A DNA stretch of 63,849 bases, the filler included, from Octopus bimaculoides (Eukaryota): the NCBI RefSeq assembly GCF_001194135.2. It is 6 parts of 6 records of this genome, joined end to end, with 100 filler letters (N's around TTAATTAATTAA, not from the genome) between each part and the next. Parts side by side here need not be neighbours in the genome. Positions count along the whole stretch, not along the records: positions 31,457 to 51,246 come from NC_069001.1; 5 more parts are not named here. One strand, 5' to 3'. Below are positions 31,457 through 51,246 of the stretch, piece after piece (within the stretch, counting starts at the first letter, position 1; each line of letters starts with the position of its first letter). The notes below the pieces were generated by a model that was not told where the DNA came from, did no database searches, and saw nothing but the letters and a program-made list of their open reading frames with translations. A program made the position numbers and the translations under genes.

Positions 31457-31630
31457 CTGACTTTAAGAGTATTGCAAAGGGCCTGATTGGAGGCCCAACC
31501 TTCAGAATTCTTTTAAAGGACCACTGCAATGAGTGTGTGAATCTGAGAGGGGAATATGTTGAATAAAATCATAACTGATCCTCCTGTATTTTCTTTTACC
31601 CAAAGCCAGGAACTTTCCAGCACCCCTTGT

Positions 31631-31790
31631 CATCGTCGTCATCGTCGTTTAACGTCTGCTTTCCATGCTAACATGGGTTGGACGATTTGACTGAGGACTG
31701 GTGAAACCAGATGGCTACACCAGGCTCCAATCTGATTTGGCAGAGTTTCTACAGCTGGATGCCCTTCCTAACGCCAACCACTCCGAGAGT
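31631..31790 (-). mobile_element. Family D retroposon 3' end
   Basis: Reverse complement of ggcgttaggaagggcatccagctgtagaaactctgccaaatcagattggagcc...cagtcaaatcgtccaacccatg. Confidence 0.75.
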
Positions 31791-32444
31791 ATGGCTACTC
31801 ACATTTTACAAGCTGGATGAAAATGCTTGAATGGAACCAGAGGGCAATATTCTTTTGGGGTTTTTGCTTATTGCAGCTCATTCCCAATAGCATGTTTGCT
31901 TCTTCTGGCCTCAATTATATTTCATTTTGTGATGTCTTCCCATTCTTGTGTTGCTGTATTATTTAAACATTCCTTTGTTACAGCAATTAATTCATTTATT
32001 TTGTGAGGTTTTCTACGACCCATATTTTCTCACAGAGGTTTTCCACTTTTCTCTGTCCTTGCCAGACTCTCTACTTGTGCTAATATTATTTTCTTATTTA
32101 ATCCCCTGTAAAGACTTTGTTTATCCTCTCAAAACATTTGATTTTGTTTGAATCATACTATATATTTACTAAATCTTGTATTCTCCATGCATTATCTTTC
32201 ATCTGTTGAATTAATATTTGTACAGAATCTTCTTTTATGGGGGGGTGCGGAATATATATGTGAACCTGTTTTGGATTTTATTTATTCTATATCATATCTC
32301 TTACTGTCTCTCTCTCACTCAGTCTTTTGTTTCCAAACAGGATCTCTTTTATATTTTCTACTTTTTTTCCTTTATTTCAATGCCAGCTGCTCTGGTTGCT
32401 AAGCAGACTGTGGCTTACATTATTCCTTTTAACATCATCAAGCA

Positions 32445-32955
32445 CAGGTGTGGCTGTGTGGTAAGAAGCTTTCTTCCCAACCACATGGTTCCAGGTTCAG
32501 TTCCACCGCATGGAACCTTGAGCAAGTGTCTTTTACTTTAGCCTTAGGTTGACCAAAGCCTTGTGAGTGGATTCGGTACATAGAAACTGCTTGACAAGGC
32601 GAGCTGGCAGAAACGTTAGCACGCCGGGCGAAATGCTTAGTGGTATTTCGTCTGCCGCTACGTTCTGAGTTCAAATTCCTCCAAGGCCGACTTTGCCTTT
32701 CATCCTTTTGGGGTCGATAAATTAAGTACCAGTTACACACTGGGGTTGATATTATCGACTTAACCCCTTTGTCTGTCCTTGTTTCTCCCCTCAATGTTTA
32801 GCCTCTTGTGGGCAATAAAAAAAAAATAAGAAACTGCTTGACAAGCAGTGTTGGTGTGTTTACATACCCCGTAACTTAGCGGTTCAGCAAAAAACACAAT
32901 AGAATAAGTACTAAGCTTAAAAAAAAAGTCCTGAAGTCGATTTGTTTAACTAAAA
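32445..32955 (+). mobile_element. SINE family B with a SINE family A nested inside (32597-32822)
   Basis: Family B head and body interrupted by a full family A copy, with agaaactgcttgacaag duplicated on both sides of it. Confidence 0.75.
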
Positions 32956-33392
32956 CNNNNNNNNNNNNNNNNNNNNNNNNNNNNNNNNNNNNNNNNNNNN
33001 NNNNNNNNNNNNNNNNNNNNNNNNNNNNNNNNNNNNNNNNNNNNNNNNNNNNNNNNNNNNNNNNNNNNNNNNNNNNNNNNNNNNNNNNNNNNNNNNNNNN
33101 NNNNNNNNNNNNNNNNNNNNNNNNNNNNNNNNNNNNNNNNNNNNNNNNNNNNNNNNNNNNNNNNNNNNNNNNNNNNNNNNNNNNNNNNNNNNNNNNNNNN
33201 NNNNNNNNNNNNNNNNNNNNNNNNNNNNNNNNNNNNNNNNNNNNNNNNNNNNNNNNNNNNNNNNNNNNNNNNNNNNNNNNNNNNNNNNNNNNNNNNNNNN
33301 NNNNNNNNNNNNNNNNNNNNNNNNNNNNNNNNNNNNNNNNNNNNNNNNNNNNNNNNNNNNNNNNNNNNNNNNNNNNNNNNNNNNNNNNNNNC

Positions 33393-33605
33393 AAGGCGAG
33401 CTGGCAGAAACGTTAGCACGCCGGGCGAAATGCTTAGTGGTATTTCGTCTGCCGCTACGTTCTGAGTTCAAATTCCACTAAGGTCAACTTTGCCCTTCAT
33501 CCTTTTGGGGGTCTATAAATTAAGTATCGGTGAAAGACTGTGGTTGATGTAATCGACTAGTCCTCTCCCCCCAATTTCAGGCCTTGTGCCTATAATAGAA
33601 AAGAT
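33393..33605 (+). mobile_element. SINE family A
   Basis: aaggcgagctggcagaaacgttagcacgccggg...aggccttgtgcctataatagaaaagattatt. Confidence 0.8.
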
Positions 33606-33610
33606 TATTA

Positions 33611-34664
33611 TTACCTCCGCTTTAGCGAAGGCAGAGGTATTGTTTTCAGTCATGTTTGTTTGTTTGTTTGTCCATGGACAGGATATCTCAAGAACTGCTA
33701 GATGGATTCAGATGAAACTTTCATGGATGTTTGGCCTTGTGACTGGCACAAACTGATTATATTTTGGGATCGGTCTGGTACCGGACAAGGATTATGGATT
33801 ATTTGTTATATTTACTTTGCATGAAGTACTACGATCTTACAGACTTTCAAGTCTTTCTCTGATTATCTCCCTTGAAAGCACATTCATGGTTTCCACATAA
33901 GTTATGGTGGTGTTACTGTTTCCAAAGTTTTATTTTCATTTCCCTATTATTAATTTTACTCGTGTCTCTATTTTAGTAGAAACTAATGGATAAAGAAATC
34001 AAACTGCATAAACAAACGTCAGGGAAATCGTTTAGAAATTAAGTAACACTAACATATTTAGCAACAATAATAGATTTAATTTATCCTCGACAATTTTTGG
34101 TTTTACCAATTTTTAGTATATCACTCCTGCTTAAAACCTCTTACCCACTTGACAATTGCATTTATAGCTTTGCCTTGAAGGAAGTTTTACTTCTTGGACT
34201 TATATTTTTGTGTGCAACAATGTTGTTAACCCTCCGTTAACAGCACCGCATGCAGGTCCTTTCCGTTTTCTTTCACGCACAGATAAATTTTTCTCTATAG
34301 ACCTTAATGGTCAGAAAGACACTATATCAGTGGATAGACTGAAAAAGGCCTTCATAGAGAAAACTGTCTCTGTTACCACTGCAGATGACACACATACAGC
34401 ATTACAAACATGGCCCACATACCCACCTTCACATTCCATGACTACCATTGGGATTGATCAGGTACTGGACAAGGATTCTGGATTATTTTACCATTTTTTA
34501 AACTTAATTTTTGAGAGCAGTCAGGTTCATTTTTAGTATTCTCATTTGCAAGAGCAGTTGAGTTTATTTCAGATATTCCCATTTTAAAAATCATTTCCAG
34601 CTAATTGCTGAGAGGACGTTGGTGTTGCCTTTGCAGAGGTTTGCGCTCTCTGAGTGCTCTTGTT
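33611..34664 (+). mobile_element. DINE-1/HINE-like non-autonomous Helentron element carrying a Gypsy integrase fragment (copy 1)
   Basis: 5' ACCTCCGC(33613-20)/GCAGAGGT(33631-38) stem, (GTTT)n, 3' subTIR GCAGAGGT (34633-40), 3' hairpin GCGCTC-TCT-GAGTGC, inserted in a TT-rich tract. Internal SWTYIFVCNNVVNPPLTAPHAGPFRFLSRTDKFFSIDLNGQKDTISVDRLKKAF (34192-34359). Confidence 0.75.
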
Positions 34665-34781
34665 ATCATTATTATTGAGAGCAAAGAAAAAACTGCATAT
34701 GATTGACTAGCATGGAACTTCTTACCAAAATACTCCAGCTTCTTGCTCACAGTGATATCACCTGCTTTTTTTCTCTGTTTT

Positions 34782-34832
<51 letters not shown>

Positions 34833-35228
34833 AGAGACTGCTGTTCTTTGGAGCTGGTTTGTGTCATGTAACTCCACCCTGGCTCATCTAACTTATTTGT
34901 TTCATCTCTTCCCATCCCCCATATAGGATTCATTACCATATCCTTCCCAGGCCTTACACTAACCAACATTTCCAATTCTTCCATCACAAAACCTCATCCC
35001 TCTGGAAATGTTTCTTCACTGGCATCATTTTGTAGTTATTCATCAATCACATCAACTTCAGCTGTGTTGGAAGGGACTGTGAAAGAAATGGGCTCAACCT
35101 TTCCCTTCAGAGGACCAACAGCATCAACAAACACTTTAAGGCAATCTTTCCTGCTAAAACAGAAGTTAGCCATGTGGGCCCTATGATAACGTACTCCATT
35201 TTTCACTATCCTCTATATCAGTTGTTTC

Positions 35229-35453
35229 CAGCTGGGGTCCATATAAGATTTTGTTGTTAAAATCTGTGCAATAAATTGGTTATACTTCTACAATACACAA
35301 AATGTTTTGTTTTTTTTCTTACAATTCTTAATAATATTTAATTACAAAAATATAAGAATAGGATTTTTTTAAACATTGAATGGCTATGAGGGTTCACCCA
35401 TGTAAAATAGGAATCAAAGGGATCCATAGGCAAAAAATGGTTGGGAACCACTG
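35229..35453. mobile_element. hAT-like MITE (partial)
   Basis: Ends aaaaatggttgggaaccactg. The body ggggtccata...aaagggatccatagg is shared with 56407-56627. Confidence 0.6.
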
Positions 35454-35455
35454 TT

Positions 35456-35690
35456 CTACATCCTTCCCCCGCTAATACCCTTTGCCCTCATTTCTTCCTC
35501 CATCTTTAGCCATGTCTTTCTTAGCCTCTGTCTATTTCTTCCCACATCCATTTCTATCACTCCCCTCCCGCAGTATCTTACATCTTTCTTCACCACATGA
35601 CTTAGCCACTTCATCCCATTTCTTTTCACAACAGCCATCACTGGCTTGATTTGCATCATTCTCTGCAATTCCTTATTTGGCTTCCTCCAA
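35456..35690 (-). mobile_element. RTE-like LINE C-terminal fragment
   Basis: MKWLSHVVKKD...GRNRQRLRKTW resembles the RLRWFGHV...RGRPRKTW terminus of RTE-clade ORFs. Confidence 0.5.
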
Positions 35691-35705
35691 ATTGAACTAT
35701 TCTAA

Positions 35706-35869
35706 GTGCAGGAGTGACTGTGTGGTAAATAGCTTGCTTACCAACCACATAGTTCTGGGTTCAGTCCCACTGCGTGGCACCTTGGGCAAGTGTCTTCTAC
35801 TACAGCTTCGGGCTGACCAAAGCCTTGTGAGTGGATTTGGTAGACGGAAACTGAAAGAAGTCCTTCGTA

Positions 35870-35918
<49 letters not shown>

Positions 35919-36112
35919 TTGTCCACCCAACATTGCTTGACAACCGATGCTGGTGTGTTTAGGTCTGCGTAACTTAGCGGTTCAGCAAAGAGACCGATAG
36001 AATAAGTACTAGGCTTACAAAGAATAAGTCCTGGGGTCGATTTGCTCAACTAAAGGCGGTGCTCCAGCATGGCTGCAGTCAAATGACTGAAACAAGTAAA
36101 AGAGTAAAAGAG
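35706..36112 (+). mobile_element. SINE family B, full length
   Basis: tRNA-like head (tgtgtggt...gggttcagtcccactg), internal (TA/TG)n, tail aaacaagtaaaagagtaaaagag. Confidence 0.85.
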
Positions 36113-36765
36113 TATCAAAATAAAAGCAAAAAAACAATTGAGCTGTAAAGAAAGTTAAAACCAGAACATTACTGTTACAATACGTTTATTACAATAAACA
36201 TAAGGAAATGTTTTGACCCTTTAGCATTCAGTTTACTCTGTCAGATATAATGCTTATCTATTCACATGGTTTTTGGAATTAATCATGCATTATTTTATAG
36301 CTTAAAGATTTTGATGATCTGACTTTATTTTTTAGAACAATAGAGGCTGAATCTGGCCTGTTGAACACAAAACAGAATATTTGGGATGGATGATGGACTC
36401 TCCTGTTGAAGACAACGTATGAACATTCAGTTTTTGTCAAATGACCTGCACCAATGATTTGTTTATAGTGATCAAATGTATGTGCTGTACATTATCTCAC
36501 TCCCTCCATCAACTCAACGTGGCCTGAACATGTGTATGGTGTACCACATGTCAGGTGTCGAAGAGATCACAGGGCAACATGATATGAAGTGTTTTACACA
36601 AGAACACAACACACCACCTTGTCTAGGAATTGAAACCACAATCTTGCAATCATGAGTGCAACACTCTAACCACCTTCATGAATATAACTAGTTTAAATGC
36701 TAAAGGATTAAGAATTGTCTAAAAGTAAAAACATAAAAAGGAATTTCTGTTCGCTTCTTTTGCAG

Positions 36766-36912
36766 GCTTGTGACTTTAAGAAACAACTTGACTTTAAAGA
36801 TAAACAAACTAATGGCAGACATCCGGAAAATTTTGAGGGAATATCGATCTGATTTTGACCAAGACTTACAGAAAGTGAAAGATTCTAATGCAATATTAAT
36901 GAAGAGTTTCAA
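36766..36912 (+). CDS. CCDC180: CCDC180 (CFAP76) internal exon a
   Basis: ttttgcag|...TTCAA|gtatgt; 147 bp, phase 2-2; LVTLRNN...DLQKVKDSNAILMKSF(K) splices in frame to the next exon. Confidence 0.7.
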
Positions 36913-37509
36913 GTATGTAACATCATTCTACTTTCTCTATCCTACTGCTACATATACACACACACAAACACGTATGTCTCTCTGTGTGTGCGTACATATA
37001 TCTTGCAGTAATAGTAGTATGGGGGCATGCGCTGTAGCGGTGCATCACTGCATCCTCCATTTGTTAGTGATTCCTTACTCCTCGCAAATGAAACCTTTGC
37101 ACCACTCAGGCGACAACCCTCCAACCCATGGGTCTGTTTAGGTAGTCATTGCTGGTGTAGGTTTTACAAGGTCAGAATGCAAATCCTACCCCAACCTCTT
37201 TAAGTCGTCTTTTTCAACGTTGGGTCAATTCTTTGGCATGCCAGTCCCCACACAGCACTTGAGCAATGAGAAACTAAGTGTTTTTCCCAAGAACACAACA
37301 CATCACCTGATCCAGGAATTGAACCCACAATCTGGCCATCATGAGTGCAACATCTTAACTAGGTCATCCATCTTCACACGCACACACACATATGTGTGTG
37401 TGTGTGTGTGACCTACAATAATTGTGACACATCTTGTTGATGGATTCTGAGTAAATTCTATATAGATGTGTATTTGTGTATATGTATAGTTTGAGTGTGT
37501 GTGTGTGTG

Positions 37510-37790
37510 TTCTGTTTTTAGTTATTTGAAATCTTCCTCTGAGGAAGGGGCTGGTTCCATCATTGGAATGTAGATGACAATAACAAATTCACATTTTAAA
37601 CTTGAGAAAGGTCTTGCATATTTTTACTGTTCCACTTATTACAGATTGTATTTGTAATGTGCAAATTAGCTGGTTGATTTCTTTTTCTGAACAGCCTAGC
37701 CTGACAAGATTGTCACTTAGGCATTTACTCACAAAACCAAGTGCACCAGTTATCATTGATATAAATGTGAATTTATAACCCAGGAATGTG
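37510..37790 (-). mobile_element. RLE-type LINE extreme 3' end (same family as 14370-15690)
   Basis: GYKFTFISMITGALGFV...LQIQSVISGTVKICKTFLKF*. Confidence 0.7.
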
Positions 37791-38176
37791 TGTGTGTGTG
37801 TGCATGTGTGTATGTATGTATTAATTATAGTCATTTGTTATACATCCATTGTTTTCCATGTTGACATGGGTTAGGTGAGTATATTACTGAGGTATAGTTT
37901 TACAACTGGATGTCCTTCCTGTTGCTAACCATTACCTATTTTTTTCAGGGAAGAAATCTGTCGTATGTCTTTGTCTTTGAAGGCACAATGTGAGTAGAAG
38001 ATTTGTTGACAGGAAAAATAACATTGCTTCCATTTCAGGGGATTTGTAAAAGAAGAATGGATAAAAACTTCAGGACTTATTTGTATGTTGGAGTTAGTGG
38101 AGTTCAGTTTGCTTTATGAGACATGAAAGATGATAAGGTTGTATTTTAATTTAACTATTGACTCCTTATTTGGCAG

Positions 38177-38353
38177 ACCATTCTCTGAGATGGGTAATTT
38201 TTGCCCTGAAGAGATTCAGCAATACCAGAAGATTATTGACAAATTTGGCAACAAAGTGGACCAATTTGAAGGAAAGATTCTGTCTGAAATGGAAGGGATG
38301 GAATCAGCTCGCTATGATCAAGCTAATAAAATCACTCTGCAGTTTGAAGAAAG
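38177..38353 (+). CDS. CCDC180: CCDC180 internal exon b
   Basis: ttggcag|A...GAAAG|gtattc; 177 bp, phase 2-2; PFSEMGNFCPEEI...EGMESARYDQANKITLQFEE(R) resembles vertebrate CCDC180 LFSEGGNFSPKEI...YLDQANDVINKFE (recalled). Confidence 0.8.
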
Positions 38354-38762
38354 GTATTCTAAATATATTACCACGTCCACCACCACCACCACCATCTTCT
38401 TATCTTCCTTGTTTGTTGTTGGTTTTGTTCTTCTTTTTCTATTACTACAGCTACTACTCTTACTATTACTGCTTCTACTACTTCTACTTCTATTAGTTCT
38501 TGCCATTTTTCTTTTTGCAAGAATTACTGGAATAACTCTATGTTGAATCAATTACCATTTCAGGGTCAATAAAATANNNNNNNNNNTCTTGCCATTTTTC
38601 TTTTTGCAAGAATTACTGGAATAACTCTATGTTGAATCAATTACCATTTCAGGGTCAATAAAATAAGTACCAGTTGAACACTAGCACCCTCTCCCTAAAA
38701 TTGTAGGCCTTGTGCCAAACTTTGAAATCATCATCATCATCATCATTATTATTGTTATTGTT

Positions 38763-38809
<47 letters not shown>

Positions 38810-38810
<1 letters not shown>

Positions 38811-39482
38811 TAAGATGTTGCACAGTATCCAATATCATGATGTTGTTGATGGAAGATATTGTGTCTATCAGGGGTTTGTACTGTCTCTCAAGTCATAACA
38901 AGGACCTCAGACAGACAATATTTTATGCAATATGCATGCAGTTACAAGTAATGTCGATTTTTTGCAATACACCTAGATTGTTTCCAGATGTTTCTTCAGG
39001 CTGGGTGGTATTGAACCCAATACTCCGATGACAATAGAGACAACCATTATATTTGACTCGCGTAACTGCCATATCTTAGCAATCTCAATTCTTAGGTCTC
39101 CATATTTATCAACCTTTTCTCTTTCTTTCATGATAATATGTTGATCTCCTAGTACTGCCACGTCGATTATTAGGCACTCTTGTTTGTCCATTTTAAAGTT
39201 TACTATATCTGGCCTTTGGTGCTCTGACACTTGTCTGTCTGGAAGTCAAAGTAGCCAGAGGATTTTTGCCTTCCCCCTTTTCATCTATTACTTTTTCCAG
39301 TGTATGCTGGTACCAAGCACCCGTTACCTCATATCCATACTTCTGGCATAGTAACCAGTGGAGGTTTTGCACTACCTTGTTGTGTCTGTGCTTGTAATCT
39401 TCCTGTGCAATACTTTCACAAGCACTAACAATGTGAGTCACACCTTCGACCTTCTTCCCACACATTCTGCAGGGGTTCATTT
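38810..39482 (-). mobile_element. RLE-type LINE 3' fragment (R4/Dong-like) with (TAA)n tail
   Basis: CRMCGKKVEGVTHIVSAC...HRHNKV (CCHC), HQRPDIV...LIIDVAV...EKVDKYGDL (PD-D/ExK). Confidence 0.85.
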
Positions 39483-39499
39483 CCCTTTTCTTTTATTAT

Positions 39500-40915
39500 T
39501 TTTAAGACAGCAAGCTGATAGAATCATTAGCAAGCAAGGCAAAATGCTTGGCAGCATTTCATGCATCTTTACATTCTGAGTTCAAATTCTTCCAAAGTCG
39601 ACTTTACCTTTCATCCTTTTAGAGTCAATAAATTAAGTACCAGTGAAACACTGGGGTCAATGTAATTGACTAGTCCCCTGCAGTCAAATCTCAGGCCTCA
39701 GCCCTTCAGTAGAAAAGATTATTATTATTTTTTGTTTGACTTTTGTTTTGCATTTGTACAAAATATTATTATTATAAAGGTGGCGAGCTGGCAGAATCAT
39801 TAACGCACTGGGAAAAATGCTTAGTGGTATTTCGCCCACCACTATGTTCTTAGTTCAAATTCTGCCAAGGTTGACTTTGCCTTTCTTCCTTTCATCCTGT
39901 CGATGAAATAAGTACCAGTTACGCACTGGAGGTGGGGTCAATGTAATTGACTCATCCCCTCCCCAAAAATTGTGCTGCCCTTGTGGAAAAATTTGAAAGC
40001 ATCATTATTATTATTATTTTAACTGGATGATACCCTACTTGCATCCTCTTGCTAATTCTTCAAGAATGAGGAGAGTTTAGAAGAGAAACCTATCTCTTCT
40101 TCGGTCAGGTAAGGTACAACCAAAGACTTGTTCCTTTAGTGTTAACATATTTTAAGGCAAAGAAACATAGAGAAGCTTATTAGAAAAAAGAAAATTATGC
40201 AACTAGACAGAGATGGAGGGAGGCAAGGGATGGGCAAAACTTGAAGTCCCAATTAAAATTGATTTTATAATAAATTTCACTATTGAGTTTCCTACCCCTG
40301 TTGGCAAATGTTCTGTTGGTATTCTTTAAAAAATTTTCAAAATATCAACTTAAAAATGTAATTTAATATTTAAATAGAAATACTGCTGGGGTAAGTTAAT
40401 AGTAACATAGGTAGAGTAACTTAGTGGTAACATAGGTATGTTGGTGGTCAAATAGTTAGGTAAGTTGGTGGTAGAACAGCTAAGTGTGTTGCTAGGTTAC
40501 TTGGGTGTAACCTTGCTGGATAAGTCAAGAGTAACATAGCTAGGTAAGCTGATAGTAACATAGTTAGATAAGGCGGGGAGCTGGCAGAAGGCGGGGAGCT
40601 GGCAGAAGGTGGGGAGCTGGCAGAAACGTTAGCATGCCGGACGACATGCTTAGCAGTATTTCATCTGCCGTTACGTNNNNNNNNNNGGGAGCTGGCAGAA
40701 ACGTTAGCATGCCGGACGACATGCTTAGCAGTATTTCATCTGCCGTTACGTTCTGAGTTCAAATTCTGCTGAGGTCGACTTTGCCTTTCATCCTTTTGGG
40801 GTTGATAAATTAAGTACCAGTTAGGCGCTGGGGTCGATGTAATCGACTTAATCCCTTTGTCTGTCCTTGTTTGTCCCCTCTATGTTTAGCCCCTTGTGGG
40901 CAATAAAGAAATAAG
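39500..40915 (+). mobile_element. Three SINE family A copies (~39500, ~39777, ~40571), the last with a triplicated 19-bp head
   Basis: Family A consensus recognisable at each start. ggcggggagctggcagaa(g) occurs 3 times at 40571-40627. Confidence 0.7.
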
Positions 40916-41119
40916 TAACATAGTTAGATAAGATGATGGTAACATTGGTATTGGTAGTTAGATAAATAGGTAAGTTGGTGATGCCAACGGTATGTTTGTG
41001 GCAACCTAGTTAAGTAAGCTAGTGATAACATATTTAATGAAAAGGGGACAACAGAATTCTTATAAAATTGTTTCTTTTGACATCATTTACCTCCTTCATT
41101 TATTATTTGACCATTTCAG

Positions 41120-41303
41120 ATTTAAGAACCATGTCTTTGATCTTCAGTTCATAGAACTAATAGCACGATGGTTTACAAATACTCAGGTGAAGATAAAATC
41201 TGATGTGGCTAAAAGCAACAGCCAAGGAAAGAATATTTGCGACATTCTACAAAAGCTTGAGAAGAAAATCGATTACCTAACAGAACCTCATCCTGATAAA
41301 TTG
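41120..41303 (+). CDS. CCDC180: CCDC180 internal exon c
   Basis: atttcag|A...AAATTG|gtaaag; 184 bp, phase 2-0; FKNHVFDLQFIELIARWFTNTQVKIKSDVAKSNSQ resembles vertebrate [29 protein letters not shown] (recalled). Confidence 0.85.
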
Positions 41304-41411
41304 GTAAAGTACCTGGTGCCACTACAAATCTATAGAAATATTTGTGCACAACCTGATTTTCTTTAATGTTTTTCATTCTTGATGGTCTTTGTCAGTTTGT
41401 TTTGTATTTAT

Positions 41412-41697
41412 AAACAATTGCAGCGTGGAAGGTGTTTATAAGCCATTTAAAATAACACACAAAAACCGTTAGATTCACTTCAACATTTAAATTTAATTTG
41501 CCAAAATATTTCCATCGCTTTGAGACCGCGACCTATTCACTGACAAAATGCTGCACAGAATTTTGTTAGTGAACAGGTCGCGGTCTCAAAGCGACGAAAA
41601 TATTTTGACAAATTAAATTTAAATGTTGATGTGAATCTAACGGTTTTTGTGTGTTATTTTAAATGGCTTATAAATACCTTCCATGCTGCAATTGTTT
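41412..41697. repeat. Near-perfect 286-bp palindrome (foldback element)
   Basis: aaacaattgcagc...caaaat arm is the reverse complement of attttg...gctgcaattgttt; centre near 41554. Confidence 0.92.
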
Positions 41698-42149
41698 TCG
41701 TTCCAGCATACGATCTCAGATCAGGTCACTTGCTATGCAAGTACATCTCCGCAATTTGTATTTATATTTTTGTGCAAAGAGTTTTGATTCATTTGTTTGG
41801 AATTTATTTTTAAATAACACAAAAATACAAATATAAACATACAGACAAGATGTTTGAGCTATGTTAGACATTTTATGTCTCTCTTTTTTTTTTTTTAAGA
41901 ATAGCTTGATGTATTGGTGGCCTGTCAACAGCATTGAAGAGCATAAAGATTAAAGTTGTAGTTGACCAAAAGTTAGCTGGCTTGGAGGACTGGCAGCCAG
42001 GTGAATATTGGAAAAGAGTTATCTGTATCCTGATGATTTGCACCTGGTATCAAAATGCCAACATCATGATTGCTACTCATTACACTTTAAAGGCTATAAG
42101 ACATGACACGGACAACAACAACAGAGACATAGCTTTGACAGCTGGAACA

Positions 42150-42700
42150 AACACAGAAGGTGTTCTGAGGGTGTGCCAGCCCTCATCTTAGAACAGGGCC
42201 TAAGCTCAATTCAGAGGGCTGTGTGAAATTGCTGGAGAGAGTTGCTGCCGGAAGGCCATATGTGTGGCAGTAGGATTCAGTTCCTTGCCATACTTCCAGA
42301 AGGAGTCAGAAATGGTTGTCGAAGAATTTCTGATTTCCCCAGCCCCAATTTCTGGCCTCCTAATTCACCCAATTGTAACTCCATTGATTTGTATATGTAG
42401 GATGCAGTTAAAAAAGGTACCAACTGCTCTGCCTGCAACACACCAAGGCCAAGCTGATGGGCAAGCTCTAGGAGATGTTCAAAGATCTTCCCAGGACACA
42501 GTGAAGAACGCATGCATCAGGTTCCAGAACTGTCTTGAGACCGTGATGGAATCTGAGGCTGGCTACTTTGAGTAAACTGTTATCTCCCAGTCATAGTCTA
42601 GCTGATAGTTTTTGGTATTTTAAAATACTTTTATATTTGGATGGGATATTGAGCTTTTCTTTTCCTTTTACACAAATTGTCAAATTTAGACCAAACACCT

Positions 42701-42703
<3 letters not shown>
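42150..42703 (+). mobile_element. Tc1/mariner-superfamily transposase 3' remnant
   Basis: GRPYVWQ*DSVPCHTSRRSQKWL...WPPNSPNCNSID...KNACIRFQNCLETVMESEAGYFE*: catalytic QQDxAPCH and WPPNSPDLNP motifs, decayed. Confidence 0.75.
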
Positions 42704-42783
<80 letters not shown>

Positions 42784-42946
42784 TTAAAATGTTAAAATAA
42801 AAACAGAACACAAAGGATTCTGTTTTTATTTTTACATTTTTAATTTATTCTTTTACTCCGGCCACGATCTGGCATATACAGGTGCTTACAATTATCAAGT
42901 ATTACCTCTAACATTTACTTTACCTATATATATATATATATATATA

Positions 42947-43335
42947 TCAAAAAGTTTGCAGACTAGTTATGTTTAATAAAAAAAAAAATAACTTATTTAC
43001 CTAAGTTTTAATATCATCTCCTTCGAAATAGTTACCTTGCACAGCAATACACCAGTCTCAGTGTTCCTGCCACTTTTGGAATCTGATCTGGGAGTCATTT
43101 TCTGTAAGTGAGTTGTGGACCTTCTACAATTTGCTCTTGATCTCGACAATGGCATTAAAATGGTGACCTTTGAGCTGCATTTTTATCTTGTGGAAGTGAT
43201 GGAAGTCTGCAGGTGCCAAATCTGGTGAACAGAGCAAGTGCAGAAGTGATACCATGTTTTTTATTTGCGAGAAACTCAGAAGTGAGGAGAGCTTGATGAC
43301 AGGGTACATTGTTGTCATGAAGAATCCAATTTCTC
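42947..43335 (-). mobile_element. Mariner transposase 3' remnant
   Basis: ILHDNNVPCHQAL and SPDLAPADFHHFHKIKMQLKGHHF (HDNARPH / YSPDLAPxDF motifs). Truncated by a family B SINE at ~43350-43510. Confidence 0.75.
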
Positions 43336-44273
43336 GTGCTCCACCACACCAGTTGTCAAGCGGTGGTGGGGGGACAAACACAGACAGAAAGATAAACACA
43401 TACACATACATATATATATGTACACACAACAGGCTTCTTTCAGTTTCTGTCTACTGAATCTACTCACAAAGCTCTGGTTGGCTGGTGGCTTTAGTAGAAG
43501 ACACTTGCCCATTATATTATACGTGATAAAACTAGTAATGGTTATAAAAATAAAATTAGAGCTAAGTAGTGTGCTGCTATTTCTAGCAGGTTGAGCAACT
43601 GTGTAGAATCTACACATTTGCTCAACCTGATATAGAAAATTTAGCTAGACCTCATCGGACACAGGGAAGTCATTTACTTGCCATGTATAAAGTAAATTTA
43701 CAACTTTTGTCTGTATTAATTTTTTTCATCATTTCACTGTTATAAGCTCATATAATCCTTTTTTTTTTGGAGTAAAATTCATTAATTATTATCCATGTTA
43801 ATTTAGTTTAGTCATGATACCTTCCTCACCACTTAGGTGGGTCCTAGACATAATAACTACTTAAAAAGAGGCGCAACCAAAACAAAAGGTTAAGAACCAC
43901 TTTTCTAAAGTATCCTACATGTAAATGGAATTATAATAGAAGACTGGCATTCCACTACTGATCTCTGTGTTATTTTATTTCTGTGTTGTTTTAATGTATC
44001 TTGTATTACATTATTCCATGATTAAATCATCTCAATTTCCTCTTTTTTCTTAAATCTGTAGAATGATTTCCAAGAGCTTTGACTGCTATTTTTAGCAGGT
44101 CAGATGACCACATAAAGGCTCCATGTTGGTTCAAGTTTAACATTCTTCGTTTTGTTTACCTTTTTTTTTGTTTTTGTTTTTATAATATTTGATAAATTTA
44201 TATAAATCTAGCTTTTCTTAATAATAACATTTTATTTATATAATAGTTAATGTTCTAAATATTTCTTTGACAG

Positions 44274-44376
44274 AAATGTTCCCCATCAGAACTGACAGTA
44301 GATTTGGCAGATGCTTTAACACAATTTTGTTCCCGGGCCATATATTTAATTAGTCCAAAGAGCGGTAGAGAGTCAT
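44274..44376 (+). CDS. CCDC180: CCDC180 internal exon d
   Basis: ttctttgacag|AAA...TCAT|gtaagt; 103 bp, phase 0-1, compatible with both neighbours; KCSPSELTVDLADALTQFCSRAIYLISPK. Confidence 0.6.
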
Positions 44377-44649
44377 GTAAGTATTATCATTAAGGCAGTG
44401 AGCTGGCAGAGTCATTAGCATGCTGGGTAAAATGCTTAGTAGCATTTTTGCCAGTCTTCTCATTCTGAGTTCAAATTCCATTGAAGTTGACTTTGCCTTT
44501 CATCCTTTTGAAGTCAAATAAAAATAAGTACCAGTTGAGTACTGGGGTCAATGTAATTAACTTATACTCACCTCCCTCGGACTTGTTGGCCTTGTGCCAA
44601 AATTTGAAATCATCATTATCATCATCATCATCATTATTATTGTTATTTT

Positions 44650-45140
44650 TATCTCAAGTTTTGATGTAACTCCTGGAGTCTTGCATGCAAAGCAGGCTGA
44701 TGCAGCCTACAGCACCATGCTATCTGTTCTTTTCAACTAATACTTTCCTGATTATTTTGGCCATGCCAAGGAGACAGACCCTTTGCAACAGTTCTATTGG
44801 GCACTCTGTTCCGATTCCCTTTATATTCCTCTTGATGCCTTTTGATACTGTCCCCAAGGACCCAACAATAATTGACACTATCTTCACCTTCTTCATTTTC
44901 CATAGCCGGGCTATTTTTGTATTTAAAAGGATCGTATATATATCTATTTTTTTGCCTTCTTTCTTGACTATTCATGCGTCAAAAGGGCATGCAACATCAA
45001 CTATATATCACATGTGGTGCATCTTGTCCACCACCACTAGGTCTGGTCTGTTATGCTCTAGCACCTGGTCTGTTTGGATTGGGAAATCCCAGAGGATTTT
45101 GCAGGTCTCCAACTCCACCACTCTCTGCTGTTTGTGTACA
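44650..45140 (-). mobile_element. RLE-type LINE 3' fragment
   Basis: VELETCKILWDFPIQTDQVLEHNRPDLVVVDK (RLE). Confidence 0.75.
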
Positions 45141-45394
45141 TTATTAATATTATTATTACTAAGGAAACAAGCTGGCAAAATCGTTAGCTTACAAGGCAAA
45201 ATGCTTAGTGGCATTTTGTCCATATGTAGGTTCTGATTTCAAATGCTGTCAAGGACAACTTACCATTTCATTCTTGTAAAGATAAATAAAATATGTACTA
45301 ATTGATCTCTGGGGTCAAGGTAATCAACTTATGCTCTCCTTCAAAATTGCTGGCCTTGTAAAAAGATTATTATTATTATTATTATTATTATTAT

Positions 45395-46065
45395 TGCCTT
45401 TGCACAGCTTCTGACACTGGAGATTTACTATGGTGTCAGCTGTTCACTACCAGTGAACTAAGGTAACACCTCTTATTTTTCGAGCACCTTCCGGAGTATT
45501 CGAGCGGTTCCAAGCAGTGCTGTTTTCTGCAAATGCTCCACCCTTATCGCAGCACCTATTTGTTCCACATACTTCTCAAGATCTTTATTCACTGTTCCCA
45601 GGGCTCTGACAATTATTGGTACTACCGCTACCTTTTTCATCGACCACAACTGCTTAACTTCCCAAGCTAACCTGCCATATCTCTCGACTTTTCTTTCTTC
45701 CTTATCGCATACCTTGTTGTCAGCTGGGCATACTATGTCTATGATCCAGCATAGTTTGTTTTCTTTCTCAATAAAGACTATGTCTGGTTTCCTATTCTTT
45801 ATCTCATGGTCGCACTGAATAATAAAATCCCACAGGATCTTTGCATTTCTATTTTCGACGATGGCTTCAGGTTTGTGGTCGTACCAATTTTTTGCTCTGT
45901 CAAGTCCATACTTGTCACAAAGTGTCCAATGGACAAGCCTGGCTATATTGTCGTGGCATCTCTAATATTCCTTCTGGGCTAGTGGCGTACATTGGCTGGT
46001 AATATGCCATACGGTTTCACTGTTTTGTCCACAGATTCTGCACTTATCACTTTCTGCTGTGTTGT
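45395..46065 (-). mobile_element. RLE-type LINE 3' fragment with (TAA)n tail
   Basis: HDNIARLVHWTLCDKYGL...NWYDHKPE...KILWDFIIQCDHEIKNRKPDIV...WIIDIVCP...LGTARILRKVLEK*. Confidence 0.85.
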
Positions 46066-46541
46066 CTCTTCTGTATTATTATTATTATTATTATTATTGT
46101 TATTGTTATTGTTAAAGCAGTGAGCTGGCAGAATTGTTACTGTGCCTGACAAAATGCTTAGTAGCATTTCTTCTGACTTTACATTCTGAGTTCAAATCCT
46201 TTCAGGGTTGATAAAATAAATACTAGTTATGCACATGAGTCAACATAACCAACTATCCCCATCCCCACAAAATTTCAGGCCTTGTGCTTATAATAGAAAG
46301 GCTTATTATTATTTTTACCCTTAAAGTGGAGACCTAGCAGAGCTATTACCACACCAGACAAAATACTCAACAGCAATTCTTCTGGCTTTTAGGTTCTCAG
46401 ATCAAATTCTGCCAAAGTCAACTTTGCCTCTCATCTTTTTGGGGGTTGATTAAATAAATACCAGTTGAGTACTGGGGTTGATATAATCAACTAATCCCCC
46501 CTCCCACCAAAATTTCAGGCCTTGTGCTTACAGTTGGCAGG

Positions 46542-46592
<51 letters not shown>

Positions 46593-47070
46593 GAGGCAGC
46601 AAGCTGGCAGAATCATTAGCACAATGGACAAAATGCTTAGCAGTATTTTGTTTGTCATTACATTCTGAGTTCAAATTCCGCCAAGGTTGACTTTGCCTTT
46701 CATCCTTTCGGAGACAATTAAATAAACACCAGTTGAGTACTGGAGGTTGATGTAATTGACTTAATCCTGTCTCCTGAATTTTAGGTTTTGTGCCTACAGT
46801 AGAAAGTATTATTATTATCATTATTATTATTATTTAAGGTGGTGAGTTAGCAGTGTCATTAGCATGCTGGGAAAAATACATAGGAACTTTACGTCCATCT
46901 TTATGTTTTGAGCTCAAATTCCACTGAGGTCAACTTTACCTTTCGTTCTTTCGGGGTCGATGAAATAAGTACTAGTTGAGCCCTGGGGTCAATGAAACTT
47001 ATCCCCTTCCCCAAAATTGCTGGCCTTGCACCAAAATTTGGAATCATTATTATTATTATTGTTACTATTA

Positions 47071-48108
47071 TTACCTCCGCTTTGGTGAAGGCGGAGTTAT
47101 TGTTTTCGGTCATGTTTGTTTGTTTATCCGTGGACAAGATACACAAGAACCACTGGATGGATTTGGATGAAACTTTCAGGGGTGTTTGGCCTCGTGACTG
47201 GCACAAACTGATTATATTTTGGAATTGATCTGGTACTGGACAAGGATTCTGGCTTGTTTGTTATATTTACTTTACATGAATTCTTACGATCTTACATTGA
47301 CTTTCAAGTCTTTTTTCTGATTATCTCCCTTGAAAGCACACTTATGATTCCCACGTAAGTTATGGCAGCATTGCTGTTTCCAAAGTTTTATTTTTGTTTC
47401 TCTGTTATCAATTTTACTCATGTCTCTATCTTGGCAGAAACTGATGGCTATAGAACTACATAAACAAATGGCAGCAAAACTGTTCAGAAATGAAATAACA
47501 CTAACATATTCAGTAACAATAATAAATTTAATTTATCCTCAACAATTTTTAGTTTTACCAATTTTGAATATATCACTCCTGTTTAAAACCTCTTACCTAC
47601 TTGACAATTGCATTTCTAGATCTGCCTTGAAGGAAGCTTTACTTTTTGGACTCATGTTTTTGTGTGCAACGATGTTGTTAAACCTACATTAACAGCACCA
47701 TATGCAGGTCTTTTCCAATTTCTTTCATGCATGGATAAATTTTTCACTATAGACCTTAATGGTCGTAAAGACACTATATCAGTGGATAGACTAATAAAGC
47801 CTTCATAGAGAAAACTGTCCCTGTTCCAACTGCAAATGACACATACAGCATTACAAACACAGCCCACACACCCACCTTCACATTCCATGACTACCATTGT
47901 GATCAATCAGGTACTGGACAAGGATTCTGGATTATCTTTCCAGTTTTTTTACTTAATTCTTGAGAGCAGTCAGGTTCATTTTTAGTATTCTCGTTTGTGA
48001 GAGCAGTTGAGTTTATTTCAGATATTCCCATTTTAAAAATCATTTCCAGCTAATCGTTGAGGGGACGTTGGTGTTGCCTTGGCAGAGGTTTGTGTTCTCT
48101 GAGTACTC

Positions 48109-48112
<4 letters not shown>
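47071..48112 (+). mobile_element. DINE-1/HINE-like Helentron element with Gypsy integrase fragment (copy 2)
   Basis: Co-linear with 33611-34664 end to end; same subTIRs and hairpin; DVVKPTLTAPYAGLFQFLSCMDKFFTIDLNGRKDTISVDRL; flanks differ from copy 1. Confidence 0.75.
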
Positions 48113-48139
<27 letters not shown>

Positions 48140-48357
48140 ATTTGAAGGTGGCAAGCCAGCAGAATTGTTAGCACACTGGGCAAAATGCTTACCAACATTT
48201 CGTCTATCTTTACATTCTGAGTTCAAATTCCGCCAAGGTCAACTTAGGCTTTCATCCTTTCTGGATTGATAAATTAAGTACCAGTGAAACTCTGAGGTTG
48301 ATGTAATCAACTACTCCCCTCCCCCCAATTTCAGGCCTTGTACCTTTAGTAGATAGG

Positions 48358-48410
<53 letters not shown>

Positions 48411-48671
48411 AGTGGCGAAGTGGCAAAACCATTAGGTCATTGAACAAAATGCTTGTTGGCACTTCTTCCCACTCTTTTTGTCGCTTTATATGCTGAGCTG
48501 AAATCCTGCCAAGATCAACCATTGTAAAGAAAATTGATGAACAGTTGCAAAGATATTCAGTGATATTTGTTGAAGCCAAGTGACACAGACACTCCCTTAT
48601 CCTCTCACCATCATAAGGCAGCGAACCAGTGATTGAACTATTGAGGACTTGTGACCCATGTTTCTATTGAT

Positions 48672-48891
48672 CTTTTACTTGTTTCAGTCATGTGACTGCA
48701 GCCATGTTGGGTCACTGCTTTGAAGGGTTCAACCTCTCAAAGAATTCCACTCCAGGACTTATTCTCTTTAAGCCTAGTACTTATTCTATCAGTCACTTTT
48801 GCTAAACTGCTAAGTTACTAAGACATAAAAACACTCAACCACTGATTGTCAAGTGGGTGGGAAACAAACACAGACACAAAGACACACACAG

Positions 48892-48922
<31 letters not shown>

Positions 48923-49096
48923 CACACACACACACGTTAGGCTTCTTTCAGTTTTCCTCTACCAAATCCACTCACAAGGCTTTTGTCAGCTCGAGGCTAT
49001 AATAGAAGACACTTGCCCAAGGTGCCACACAGTGAGACTGAACTCAGAACCATGTGGTTGGAAGCAAGCTTCTTACCATACAATCATGCCTGTGCC
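48672..49096 (-). mobile_element. SINE family B, near full length
   Basis: Reverse complement of the family B head, body and tail. Confidence 0.8.
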
Positions 49097-49232
49097 TATG
49101 ATATATAATATATATAAATATAAATACAGGAGGTAGGTTCATCTAATTTTACCTTCTCTCCTAAAACTTGTGAAAAATGATTGACTTATACTGATGAATT
49201 TTTTTTTTTTTTTTTTTTTTTTTCTTTTTCAG

Positions 49233-49344
49233 CAGCTTTCAAGTCAGGTTTTCTGAATGTCCCAAGTGAAGTACCTCCTACTTCCAAAGCCGGAAAAATA
49301 TGGACTGACGATGTTTCTATCTTTGTTGCTAAAAACATTCTTCG
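49233..49344 (+). CDS. CCDC180: CCDC180 internal exon e
   Basis: Long poly-T tract, then cag|CA (NAGNAG)...CTTCG|gtaaat; 112 bp, phase 1-2; PPTSKAGKIWTDDVSIFVAKNIL(R) resembles vertebrate [21 protein letters not shown] (recalled). Confidence 0.7.
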
Positions 49345-49948: not shown

Positions 49949-49995
49949 GACTAACAAATTACTAAACAGTTCAGACGGGAGTCTGTTACCAAAAG
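49949..49995 (+). CDS. CCDC180: CCDC180 internal exon f (short)
   Basis: ttttttgcag|G...AAAAG|gtaaaa; 47 bp, phase 2-1, in frame with exon e. Confidence 0.55.

Positions 49996-51199: not shown

Positions 51200-51246
<47 letters not shown>

What the first reader, a model, noticed from the sequence alone, without database searches (positions are those of the whole stretch)
33611..34664. Helentron-type non-autonomous element that captured a Gypsy integrase fragment and kept transposing
Seen: two ~1.05-kb co-linear copies (here, and 47071-48112) with different flanks. They have DINE-1/HINE architecture: a 5' subTIR stem, (GTTT)n, a 3' subTIR, a 3' hairpin and TT targets. Inside, a ~645-bp cargo lies between ~39-bp direct repeats of element sequence (33766-33804 and 34450-34488). 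The cargo includes the GPY/F-region C-terminus of a Gypsy integrase (TYIFV..N.V.PPL..P.AGPF...SRTDKFF.IDLNG.KDTISVDRLK.AF). Established: canonical Helitrons capture DNA; this is far less documented for Helentron/HINE. Inference: capture by template switch or repair with duplication, then amplification, i.e. cross-class TE shuffling.
Basis: partly seen in the sequence, partly recalled or inferred. Interest (0 to 1): 0.7.

Follow-up and report, generated by a model that had tools for sequence, protein, structure and literature searches.

The report
Octopus HINE transposon carrying a Gypsy fragment
Two decayed copies of a small non-autonomous rolling-circle-type transposon (HINE/DINE-1 kind) in an octopus-like genome carry the same 643-bp foreign insert, part of it a piece of a Gypsy retrotransposon integrase; this is a tidy but fairly ordinary case of one mobile element picking up a piece of another.

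Summary
Two co-linear copies, 33611-34664 and 47071-48113, are 88% identical (K2P 0.13), and their flanks are alike only at background level. Each sits inside the (ATT)n tail of a different SINE. Removing each copy restores an in-phase (ATT)n run, so each inserted within a TT with no target duplication.

The ends have full HINE/DINE-1 anatomy. They are also homologous to more than 120 elements found in animal-derived metagenome contigs; the complete ones are mostly 195-480 bp. In those relatives the core block occurs once.

In the octopus copies a 41-bp piece of that block is duplicated (33764-33804 and 34448-34488) around a 643-bp insert. The last 277 bp of the insert are a sense fragment of a Ty3/Gypsy integrase C-terminus (GPF motif; E 2e-26; 74% DNA identity to an Octopus bimaculoides Gypsy locus). 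The first 364 bp match nothing.

Backbone and insert diverged equally between the copies, and the two repeats differ by one shared substitution. The insert was therefore acquired once, and the element then moved at least once.

The capture mechanism (template switch or filler-DNA repair) is inferred. Not tested: the donor locus, insert-free octopus copies and the autonomous Helentron. Helentron capture is already documented, so this is a new member of a known kind. Interest is low to moderate.

The parts
33611..34664 (+). Copy 1 of the insert-bearing HINE (1054 bp), TTACCTCC...GAGTGCTCTTGTT
   Evidence: Alignment with copy 2. The 3' tail TCTTGTT is identical to that of 16 metagenome elements.
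47071..48113 (+). Copy 2 of the same element (1043 bp), 88% identical to copy 1
33613..33637 (+). 5' subTIR ACCTCCGC with its nearby complementary IR GGCAGAGGT (a palindromic 5' end), beginning 2 nt from the terminus. In copy 2: 47073-47097.
   Evidence: Folds as a hairpin, z -2.5 (copy 1) and -3.3 (copy 2). Aligns with TTACCTCCGCCAAGGAGGT of the metagenome elements.
33654..33671 (+). (GTTT)4.5 microsatellite. In copy 2: 47114-47125, one unit shorter.
   Evidence: The same position holds (GTYT)n in the relatives.
33672..33763 (+). Conserved HINE core (GATGAAACTTTCA...ATTTTGG)
   Evidence: 60-67% identity to about 40 metagenome elements. Co-linear alignment.
33764..33804 (+). Direct repeat 1: 41 nt of HINE core. 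In copy 2: 47219-47259.
33805..34168 (+). Insert segment A: 364 bp, AT-rich, non-coding, origin unknown. In copy 2: 47260-47620.
   Evidence: No match to the backbone, to other loci or to the rest of the piece.
34169..34447 (+). Insert segment B: sense fragment of a Ty3/Gypsy integrase C-terminus (about 90 codons, GPF motif at HAGPFRF). In copy 2: 47621-47896, broken by frameshifts and a stop.
   Evidence: 74% and 72% DNA identity to O. bimaculoides loci L001 and L123.
34448..34488 (+). Direct repeat 2: 41 nt. In copy 2: 47897-47937.
34489..34626 (+). 3' internal HINE region with two imperfect units of about 37 nt (central repeats)
   Evidence: copy 2 family D1: 47961-47996 / 47998-48033, 72%.
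34627..34640 (+). 3' subTIR GCCTTTGCAGAGGT. In copy 2: 48076-48089, GCCTTGGCAGAGGT.
34643..34657 (+). 3' palindrome GCGCTC-TCT-GAGTGC, 7 nt from the terminus. In copy 2: 48092-48106, GTGTTC-TCT-GAGTAC.
   Evidence: This motif was used to retrieve the relatives.
33604..33611 (+). Left half of the split (ATT)n SINE tail at the copy 1 target. The right half is 34664-34677. At copy 2 the halves are 47046-47071 and 48113-48138.
   Evidence: Joining the flanks restores in-phase (ATT)n at both sites.

Best explanation
These are two old, decayed insertions of one subfamily of a non-autonomous Helentron-type element (HINE / DINE-1-like) in an octopus-like genome.

The ancestor was a backbone of about 370 bp: 5' palindromic subTIR, (GTTT)n, conserved core, short central repeats, 3' subTIR, 3' hairpin and T-rich ends. 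In one event, a break or a replication/repair template switch inside the conserved core introduced 643 bp of foreign DNA. That DNA consists of 364 bp of unknown origin followed by 277 bp from the 3' end of a Ty3/Gypsy integrase gene. DNA synthesis resumed 41 nt upstream of the point where it had left the element, so a 41-bp piece of the core now brackets the insert.

Both termini stayed intact. A Helentron Rep/helicase supplied in trans could therefore still mobilise the enlarged element, and it inserted at least once more. Both visible copies sit precisely within a TT of the (ATT)n tail of two unrelated SINE copies. Since then both copies have decayed neutrally, and the integrase fragment has no function.

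Shown: the anatomy, homology of the ends and core to other HINE-like elements, the Gypsy origin of segment B, a single acquisition before the copies split, and independent precise insertions. Inferred: the template-switch / filler-DNA mechanism and mobilisation by a Helentron.
For: Anatomy and homology.
- The termini occur only twice in the window.
- The 3' end motif is found in more than 120 metagenome contigs of animal origin, judged from Mab-21, C2H2 zinc-finger and fn3 ORFs.
- 40 of these elements have both ends within 3 kb, and 32 of the 40 are 195-480 bp long.
- The octopus 5' part (positions 1-194, including repeat 1) aligns co-linearly with them. In them the repeat block occurs once and is followed within 30-90 bp by the 3' subTIR.
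- 33 of the 41 occurrences of the 5' subTIR motif that are not the reverse strand of a 3' subTIR are preceded by TT, and 90 of 118 3' ends finish in ...GTT.

Foreign insert.
- Segments A and B have no counterpart in those elements or in the backbone.
- Segment B matches Gypsy integrase C-termini: profile search with 143 hits at E<=1e-10, whose full-length members have RVT_1, RT_RNaseH_2, Integrase_H2C2 and rve.
- It has 55% amino-acid identity to P0003 and 74% DNA identity to its locus L001, and the homology stops exactly at the repeat 2 junction.

Single capture followed by transposition.
- All four segments are 87-91% identical between the copies, while the flanks are at background.
- The two repeats differ by 1 shared and 10 private substitutions.
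- Excision restores in-phase (ATT)n at both sites.

Literature.
- HINE defining features and Helentron capture of gene fragments: PMC4067079.
- An internal capture excludes end bypass and fits the filler-DNA model: PMC6544945.
Against: - No insert-free copy of this family from the same genome was available. None was found in 124 kb of O. bimaculoides / O. sinensis DNA or elsewhere in the piece. The ancestral 'empty' element is therefore inferred only from relatives in other animals.
- The donor locus is unknown, so microhomology at the junctions, which the filler-DNA model predicts, could not be checked.
- No autonomous Helentron sharing these termini was found.
- Only two copies are known, so 'amplification' rests on one or two transposition events.
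- The ssDNA fold of the repeat region shows no hairpin that could explain a breakpoint there.
Confidence: 0.75

Rival explanations
1. Composite (chimeric) transposition. Two separately truncated HINE copies in the same orientation flanked a stretch of genomic DNA that contained a dead Gypsy remnant. The transposase used the 5' end of the left copy and the 3' end of the right copy, so the whole unit became a new element.
For: Composite transposition between neighbouring elements is a proposed capture route for Helitrons and Helentrons (PMC4067079). The insert is itself composite, unknown DNA followed by a Gypsy fragment, as ordinary genomic DNA next to a truncated Gypsy would be.
Against: It needs two independent truncations whose end points fall within 41 bp of each other in the same conserved block. 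The two repeats were 40/41 identical when the copies split. That fits one duplication event better than two separate, diverged HINE copies.
Confidence: 0.12
2. Independent nested insertion. The 643 bp are another mobile element, or a retro-copied RNA, that integrated into a HINE and made a 41-bp target-site duplication. The composite was then mobilised.
For: The insert is bracketed by a direct duplication of the host element, which is formally what a target-site duplication looks like. Target-primed reverse transcription by LINEs can give long, variable duplications (general knowledge), and LINEs are abundant in octopus genomes (PMC13282606).
Against: - The insert has no terminal inverted repeats, no LTR-like TG...CA ends, and no poly(A) or microsatellite tail on either strand.
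- The Gypsy piece is an internal coding fragment that ends inside the ORF, not at a transcript end.
- No other copy of segment A exists in the piece or in 124 kb of octopus DNA.
- 41 bp is far outside the 4-6 bp made by LTR-element integrases (general knowledge).
Confidence: 0.06
3. The two copies arose by local segmental duplication or gene conversion rather than by transposition. They lie only 13.4 kb apart, and both follow a SINE.
For: Proximity on one scaffold. Both copies are preceded by a SINE and embedded in ATT repeats. A 435-N gap lies 220 bp upstream of copy 1.
Against: - The upstream SINEs are 74% identical, below the median for unrelated SINE pairs here (77%), whereas the element is 88% identical.
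- The downstream flanks are at random level.
- Identity drops exactly at the HINE termini.
- Both sites reconstitute an uninterrupted (ATT)n on excision.
Confidence: 0.03

Closest known systems
HINE / DINE-1-like non-autonomous Helentrons (Thomas, Vadnagara & Pritham 2014, PMC4067079)
   Same: - SubTIR 2 nt from the 5' end with a nearby complementary IR.
- Short microsatellite after it, and central repeats.
- 3' subTIR followed by a short palindrome near the 3' end.
- T-rich termini and insertion within TT.
- No coding capacity.
   Different: This element carries an extra 643-bp foreign segment bracketed by a 41-bp duplication of the core. The autonomous partner was not identified here.
Helentron-Cq-32A of Culex quinquefasciatus, carrying histone H4/H15 gene fragments (PMC4067079)
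   Same: A Helentron-type element that carries decayed fragments of foreign coding sequence and was amplified to several copies.
   Different: That element is an autonomous-type Helentron carrying host gene fragments. This one is a short non-autonomous element, and the identifiable cargo is a fragment of another transposable element (Ty3/Gypsy integrase). That paper found no coding fragments in the mite HINEs it screened.
Cg_HINE elements of the Pacific oyster (PMC7492417)
   Same: Mollusc HINEs with the same modular layout. The variable or foreign material lies between the 5' module (subTIR, IR, microsatellite) and the 60-bp 3' module.
   Different: The oyster elements carry arrays of satellite-like tandem repeats there, not a unique insert containing a retrotransposon fragment.
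Stepwise internal sequence acquisition in Helitrons explained by the filler-DNA model (Sfru_Hel1A, PMC6544945)
   Same: Foreign DNA lies inside an element whose two ends are intact. This excludes end bypass, and subfamilies are defined by the acquired segment.
   Different: Those are canonical Helitrons with identified source loci and 2-13 bp junction homologies. Here the sources are unknown, and the insert is flanked by a 41-bp duplication of the acceptor.

Membership tests
HINE / DINE-1-like (non-autonomous Helentron) | 12-15 bp subterminal inverted repeats, with the 5' one 2-4 nt from the terminus | tested here: met
   ACCTCCGC starts 2 nt from the 5' end. The 3' partner GC(A/G)GAGGT lies at 34633-34640 / 48082-48089. 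The match between arms is imperfect in octopus (8-9 nt core) but is a perfect 12 nt (ACCTCCGCCAAG / CTTGGCGGAGGT) in homologous elements.
HINE / DINE-1-like (non-autonomous Helentron) | Short IR or palindromic partner next to the 5' subTIR | tested here: met
   ACCTCCGC-N9-GGCAGAGGT folds as a hairpin, z -2.5 and -3.3.
HINE / DINE-1-like (non-autonomous Helentron) | Short microsatellite in the 5' module | tested here: met
   (GTTT)4.5 at 33654-33671 and (GTTT)3 at 47114-47125. Relatives have (GTYT)n in the same place.
HINE / DINE-1-like (non-autonomous Helentron) | Short palindrome (stem-loop) between the 3' subTIR and the 3' end | tested here: met
   GCGCTC-TCT-GAGTGC at 34643-34657, 7 nt from the end. 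The fold energy of the single sequence is not significant on its own (z -0.8). The motif is conserved in more than 120 elements, but it was the search pattern, so covariation could not be assessed.
HINE / DINE-1-like (non-autonomous Helentron) | Insertion within TT / T-rich DNA, T-rich boundaries, no target-site duplication | tested here: met
   Excising T-ACCTCC...CTCTT(G/A)-T restores an in-phase (ATT)n at both sites. Among relatives, 33 of the 41 true 5' subTIRs are preceded by TT and 90 of 118 3' ends finish in GTT. The one-base ambiguity is inherent to the repeat.
HINE / DINE-1-like (non-autonomous Helentron) | Sequence homology to other elements of this architecture | tested here: met
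   The 5' 194 nt are 60-67% identical to about 40 elements, and the 3' 38 nt are 89-95% identical. The alignment is co-linear.
HINE / DINE-1-like (non-autonomous Helentron) | An autonomous Helentron (Rep/helicase/endonuclease) in the genome that shares the terminal sequences | not testable with these tools
   No eukaryotic genome collection was searchable. No Rep/Hel ORF was found in 455 kb of metagenome loci. O. vulgaris is reported to have Helitron-order families (PMC13282606), but their termini were not compared.
Ty3/Gypsy integrase (segment B only) | Homology to the region C-terminal to the rve core in polyproteins ordered RT, RNase H, integrase | tested here: met
   In P0005, P0054, P0056, P0120, P0127 and P0146 the matching stretch lies downstream of the rve domain. 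These proteins have RVT_1, RT_RNaseH_2, Integrase_H2C2 and rve.
Ty3/Gypsy integrase (segment B only) | GPY/F motif of the integrase C-terminal module | tested here: met
   HAGPFRF in copy 1 aligns with YEGPFTV / YDGPFKV / YSGAFRV of the hits.
Ty3/Gypsy integrase (segment B only) | Zinc-binding H2C2 and catalytic rve core present (a complete, potentially functional integrase) | tested here: not met
   Only about 90 C-terminal codons are present. Pfam finds no domain. Homology to P0003 starts at its residue 99. Copy 2 is frameshifted.

The most novel reading that the evidence does not exclude
The 41-bp duplication of the conserved core around the insert may be a reproducible footprint of how Helentron-type elements acquire DNA. 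The event would be an internal template switch, or fill-in of a staggered break, at a preferred site just after the conserved core, in the same module where oyster HINEs carry their satellite arrays. If many HINE subfamilies across animals show inserts bracketed by such duplications at this site, it would define a capture mechanism distinct from end bypass and give a sequence-level handle on it.
Probability: 0.2. Interest if true: 0.45.

Novelty: new member of a known kind. Interest (0 to 1): 0.27.

Why it matters
It adds a clean, well-delimited example from a cephalopod of a short non-autonomous Helentron-type element that acquired foreign DNA internally and stayed mobile. The foreign DNA includes a piece of a class I element.

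The flanking 41-bp duplication argues against end bypass and for a repair or replication template switch. This bears on the still unsettled question of how rolling-circle elements capture sequence.

For annotation, such chimeras can make repeat annotators miscall HINE copies as Gypsy fragments, or the reverse.

There is no sign of function or selection on the captured piece. Helentron capture and TE-TE chimeras are already known, so the wider significance is modest.

Tried and rejected
- Word-indexed protein search with the integrase fragment found nothing. The exhaustive profile search was needed instead.
- Pfam on the fragment alone gave no domain.
- Word-indexed search with the translated HINE core, to fish out HINE-containing gene models, found nothing.
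- The 3' motif had 0 hits in viral contigs.
- Literature searches for the terminal sequences gave only linker noise or nothing. The supplements of the two HINE papers do not contain these termini.
- Six octopus loci (124 kb) fetched around Gypsy integrase genes contain no HINE copy. An insert-free octopus copy was therefore not obtained.
- Looking up a window ORF to identify the assembly found no record.
- A search for a Helentron Rep/Hel ORF among the metagenome loci found only host genes: Mab-21, C2H2 zinc finger, fn3.
- Segment A as a diverged duplicate of the backbone was rejected. The best local alignments are no better than shuffles.
- A duplication extending beyond 41 nt was rejected on inspection of the weak 65-nt hit.
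- A hairpin at the duplicated block as the cause of the break was not supported (z -0.3).
- Rfam found nothing in the piece.
- Coding constraint on the integrase fragment was rejected. Copy 2 has frameshifts and a stop. Amino-acid identity between the copies is 76% at 89.5% nucleotide identity, which I judge (not calculated) to be about what neutral decay gives.

Full report
WHAT IS THERE

The piece 31457-51246 is repeat-rich animal DNA. It is packed with tRNA-like SINE copies that end in (ATT)n tails. Its transposon-derived protein fragments are closest to proteins of Octopus bimaculoides and O. sinensis. I therefore treat it as an octopus or near-octopus genome. This is an inference; the exact assembly could not be identified.

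Two stretches, 33611-34664 and 47071-48113, align from end to end. They show 121 differences over 1039 aligned positions (p = 0.116, K2P = 0.129, transitions:transversions 3:1). The terminal motifs of these stretches occur exactly twice in the window, against zero expected by chance.

TRANSPOSITION, NOT DUPLICATION

Identity between the copies is even along the element:
- 5' part: 0.87
- first part of the insert: 0.87
- integrase-like part: 0.90
- 3' part: 0.91

Identity collapses exactly at the ends. The SINEs upstream of the two copies are only 74% alike, less than the median of all SINE pairs in the piece (77%). The downstream flanks score 0.736, against 0.744 +/- 0.055 for random windows under the same alignment scheme.

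Each copy splits an (ATT)n SINE tail. If the element is removed as T-ACCTCC...CTCTT(G/A)-T, the flanks join to G ATT ATT AT^T ATC ATT ATT ATT G at the first site. At the second site they join to ...ACT ATT AT^T ATT ATT ATT.... Both are in phase. That is an insertion between the two Ts of a TT dinucleotide, without a target-site duplication.

THE BACKBONE IS A HINE / DINE-1-TYPE ELEMENT

The features that Thomas et al. use to define these elements (PMC4067079) are all present:
- a subTIR beginning 2 nt from the 5' end (ACCTCCGC);
- a nearby complementary IR (GGCAGAGGT) that makes the 5' end palindromic (hairpin z -2.5 and -3.3);
- a (GTTT)n microsatellite;
- imperfect central repeats of about 37 nt;
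- a 3' subTIR (GC[A/G]GAGGT);
- a short palindrome GCGCTC-TCT-GAGTGC, 7 nt from a T-rich 3' end.

To go beyond resemblance, I scanned metagenome contigs for the 3' motif GGCRGAGGTYTGYGCTCTCYGAGTGC. More than 120 contigs carry it. They are animal DNA, judged from Mab-21, C2H2 zinc-finger and fibronectin-III ORFs.

In these contigs the motif ends short elements. Forty have both ends within 3 kb, and 32 of those are 195-480 bp long. Their layout is TT-ACCTCCGCCAAGGAGGT, (GTYT)n, core, CTTGGCGGAGGT, palindrome, then TCTTGTT or TTCTAGTT. Sixteen of them end in TCTTGTT, exactly as octopus copy 1 does. Of the 41 occurrences of the 5' subTIR motif that are not simply the reverse strand of a 3' subTIR, 33 are preceded by TT.

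The first 194 nt of the octopus element align co-linearly with about 40 of these elements at 60-67% identity, and the last 38 nt at 89-95%.

The one defining property I could not test is a Helentron with the same termini in the same genome. No eukaryotic genome collection was available, and no Rep/helicase ORF turned up in the 455 kb of fetched contigs.

THE INSERT

Inside both copies a 41-nt stretch of the conserved core is present twice:
- copy 1: 33764-33804 and 34448-34488, 88% identical;
- copy 2: 47219-47259 and 47897-47937.

The repeats bracket 643 bp. In the short relatives this core block occurs once and is followed within 30-90 nt by the 3' subTIR. The octopus arrangement is therefore an interruption of the family's normal layout.

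Neither half of the insert matches the backbone or any of the relatives.

The last 277 bp (34169-34447) are a sense-strand fragment of a Ty3/Gypsy integrase C-terminus:
- A two-sequence profile of the translated fragment found 2483 proteins at E<=1e-3 and 143 at E<=1e-10 among 1.8 billion representatives.
- In the long hits the matching stretch lies downstream of the rve core, in proteins with RVT_1, RT_RNaseH_2, Integrase_H2C2 and rve domains. That is the Ty3/Gypsy order and domain set.
- The closest protein is P0003, an uncharacterised O. bimaculoides protein. It aligns over residues 99-188 at 55% identity (E 2.5e-26).
- Its locus L001 is 74% identical at the DNA level, and a second locus, L123, is 72% identical.
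- The GPF of HAGPFRF aligns with the GPY/F motif of the hits.
- Homology begins at about 34170-34174 and stops at 34446-34447, the junction with the second repeat. Beyond that point the Gypsy loci continue differently.

The first 364 bp (33805-34168) are AT-rich, full of stops, and match nothing I could search. In real Gypsy loci the sequence upstream of the matching part encodes more integrase. The insert is therefore composite, or it comes from a locus where a truncated Gypsy remnant abutted other DNA.

ORDER OF EVENTS

Backbone and insert are equally diverged between the copies, so the insert was already present in their common ancestor. Of the 41 repeat positions, one differs between repeat 1 and repeat 2 in both copies, ten differ in a single sequence only, and several of those are CpG decays. 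The two repeats were therefore 40/41 identical when the copies separated. This fits a single duplication made together with the insertion, not long before the element moved.

The integrase fragment is not under coding constraint:
- Copy 1 happens to keep a 108-codon ORF that runs from the fragment into HINE sequence.
- Copy 2 has frameshifts and a stop.
- The copies are 76% identical in amino acids at 89.5% nucleotide identity, which I judge (not calculated) to be about what neutral decay gives.

MECHANISM

Both termini are intact and the foreign DNA is internal. Read-through of the 3' end (end bypass) therefore cannot explain it. The same argument was made for internal acquisitions in canonical Helitrons and favours the filler-DNA model (PMC6544945).

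I consider a single repair or replication event the most likely cause (confidence about 0.5 for the mechanism itself). A break or a stalled synthesis occurred just after the conserved core. One or two templates were copied elsewhere (unknown DNA, then a Gypsy remnant, or one locus containing both). Synthesis then returned to the element 41 nt upstream of the departure point. This would produce exactly the observed duplication.

Two alternatives remain possible:
- Composite transposition from two truncated neighbouring HINEs needs two coincident truncations and near-identical halves.
- Nested insertion of another element with a 41-bp target duplication is unlikely. The insert has no terminal repeats and no tail, it ends inside an ORF, and it has no other copies in what I could search.

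No hairpin in the duplicated block explains why the break would fall there.

COMPARISON WITH WHAT IS KNOWN

HINEs are known from molluscs (PMC4067079; oyster Cg_HINE, PMC7492417). In oyster the variable module between the 5' and 3' flanks carries satellite-like arrays. The octopus insert occupies the corresponding position.

Capture of coding fragments by Helentrons has been reported: histone fragments in a Culex Helentron, and a gene fragment in a Phytophthora proto-Helentron. The same study found none in seven mite families of Helentrons and HINEs, and called the frequency low.

O. vulgaris is reported to have Helitron-order families with an expansion at a Jukes-Cantor distance of about 0.09 (PMC13282606). 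This is of the same order as the roughly 0.065 per-lineage divergence seen here.

VERDICT

- only part of the cargo is Gypsy;
- the mechanism is inferred;
- only two copies are documented;
- no insert-free octopus copy or donor locus was examined;
- the Helentron partner was not tested.

It is a new member of a known kind: neat, mechanistically suggestive, but not surprising to a specialist. Interest is about 0.27.

Noticed in passing
window 32957-33391, 38577-38586, 40677-40686: Runs of N (435, 10 and 10 nt) mark assembly gaps. The first lies only 220 bp upstream of copy 1. It is bordered by two SINE copies (32595- and 33392-) that are 96% identical over their first 119 nt. The third lies between two 100% identical 65-nt SINE heads (40612-40676 / 40687-40751). 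These look like scaffolding or assembly artefacts rather than biology.
   Followed up: partly
window 41412-41697: A near-perfect foldback: two 142-nt arms, 94% complementary, only 2 nt apart. It could be a hairpin-forming inverted duplication, a foldback-type element or an assembly artefact. It was not identified.
   Followed up: no
window 34160-34175 (copy 2: 47612-47627): Integrase homology starts directly after a splice-acceptor-like motif (TTTATAG|C in copy 1, TTTCTAG|A in copy 2). The captured DNA could be an intron-exon junction of an integrase-derived gene rather than a bare Gypsy remnant. This may be coincidence.
   Followed up: no
L003-L122 (metagenome contigs) compared with window 34627-34664: The last 38 nt of the octopus element are 89-95% identical to HINE-like elements in contigs from other, unidentified animal hosts. 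Sixteen of those share the exact terminal TCTTGTT. This is strong cross-taxon conservation of the 3' end, from cis-constraint or horizontal spread.
   Followed up: partly
window 32440-32589, 35704-35931, 43363-43511, 48853-49061: Another interspersed repeat family is present in both orientations (82-86% identity). It is associated with (TA)n/(TG)n microsatellites and a recurring pseudo-ORF (...IHSQGFGQPEA..EDTCPRCHAVGLN...). It was not classified.
   Followed up: no
window 39193-39480 (-): A 95-codon ORF (MNPCRMCGKKVEGVTHIVSACE...) resembles, from memory, the zinc-knuckle C-terminal region of LINE reverse-transcriptase proteins. Pfam gave no hit.
   Followed up: partly
window 48092-48106 compared with 34643-34657: In the 3' hairpin of copy 2, the second stem pair changed on both sides (C-G to T-A) relative to copy 1, which keeps the pair. 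It is a single event and too little to count as covariation.
   Followed up: no
L093 compared with L072 (metagenome elements): Two closely related short HINE-like elements differ by an extra or replaced segment of about 100 bp immediately after the same conserved core block where the octopus insert sits. This suggests the position is a general site of sequence turnover in the family.
   Followed up: partly
window 34782-34832: A perfect (TAC)17 microsatellite lies 118 bp downstream of copy 1.
   Followed up: no
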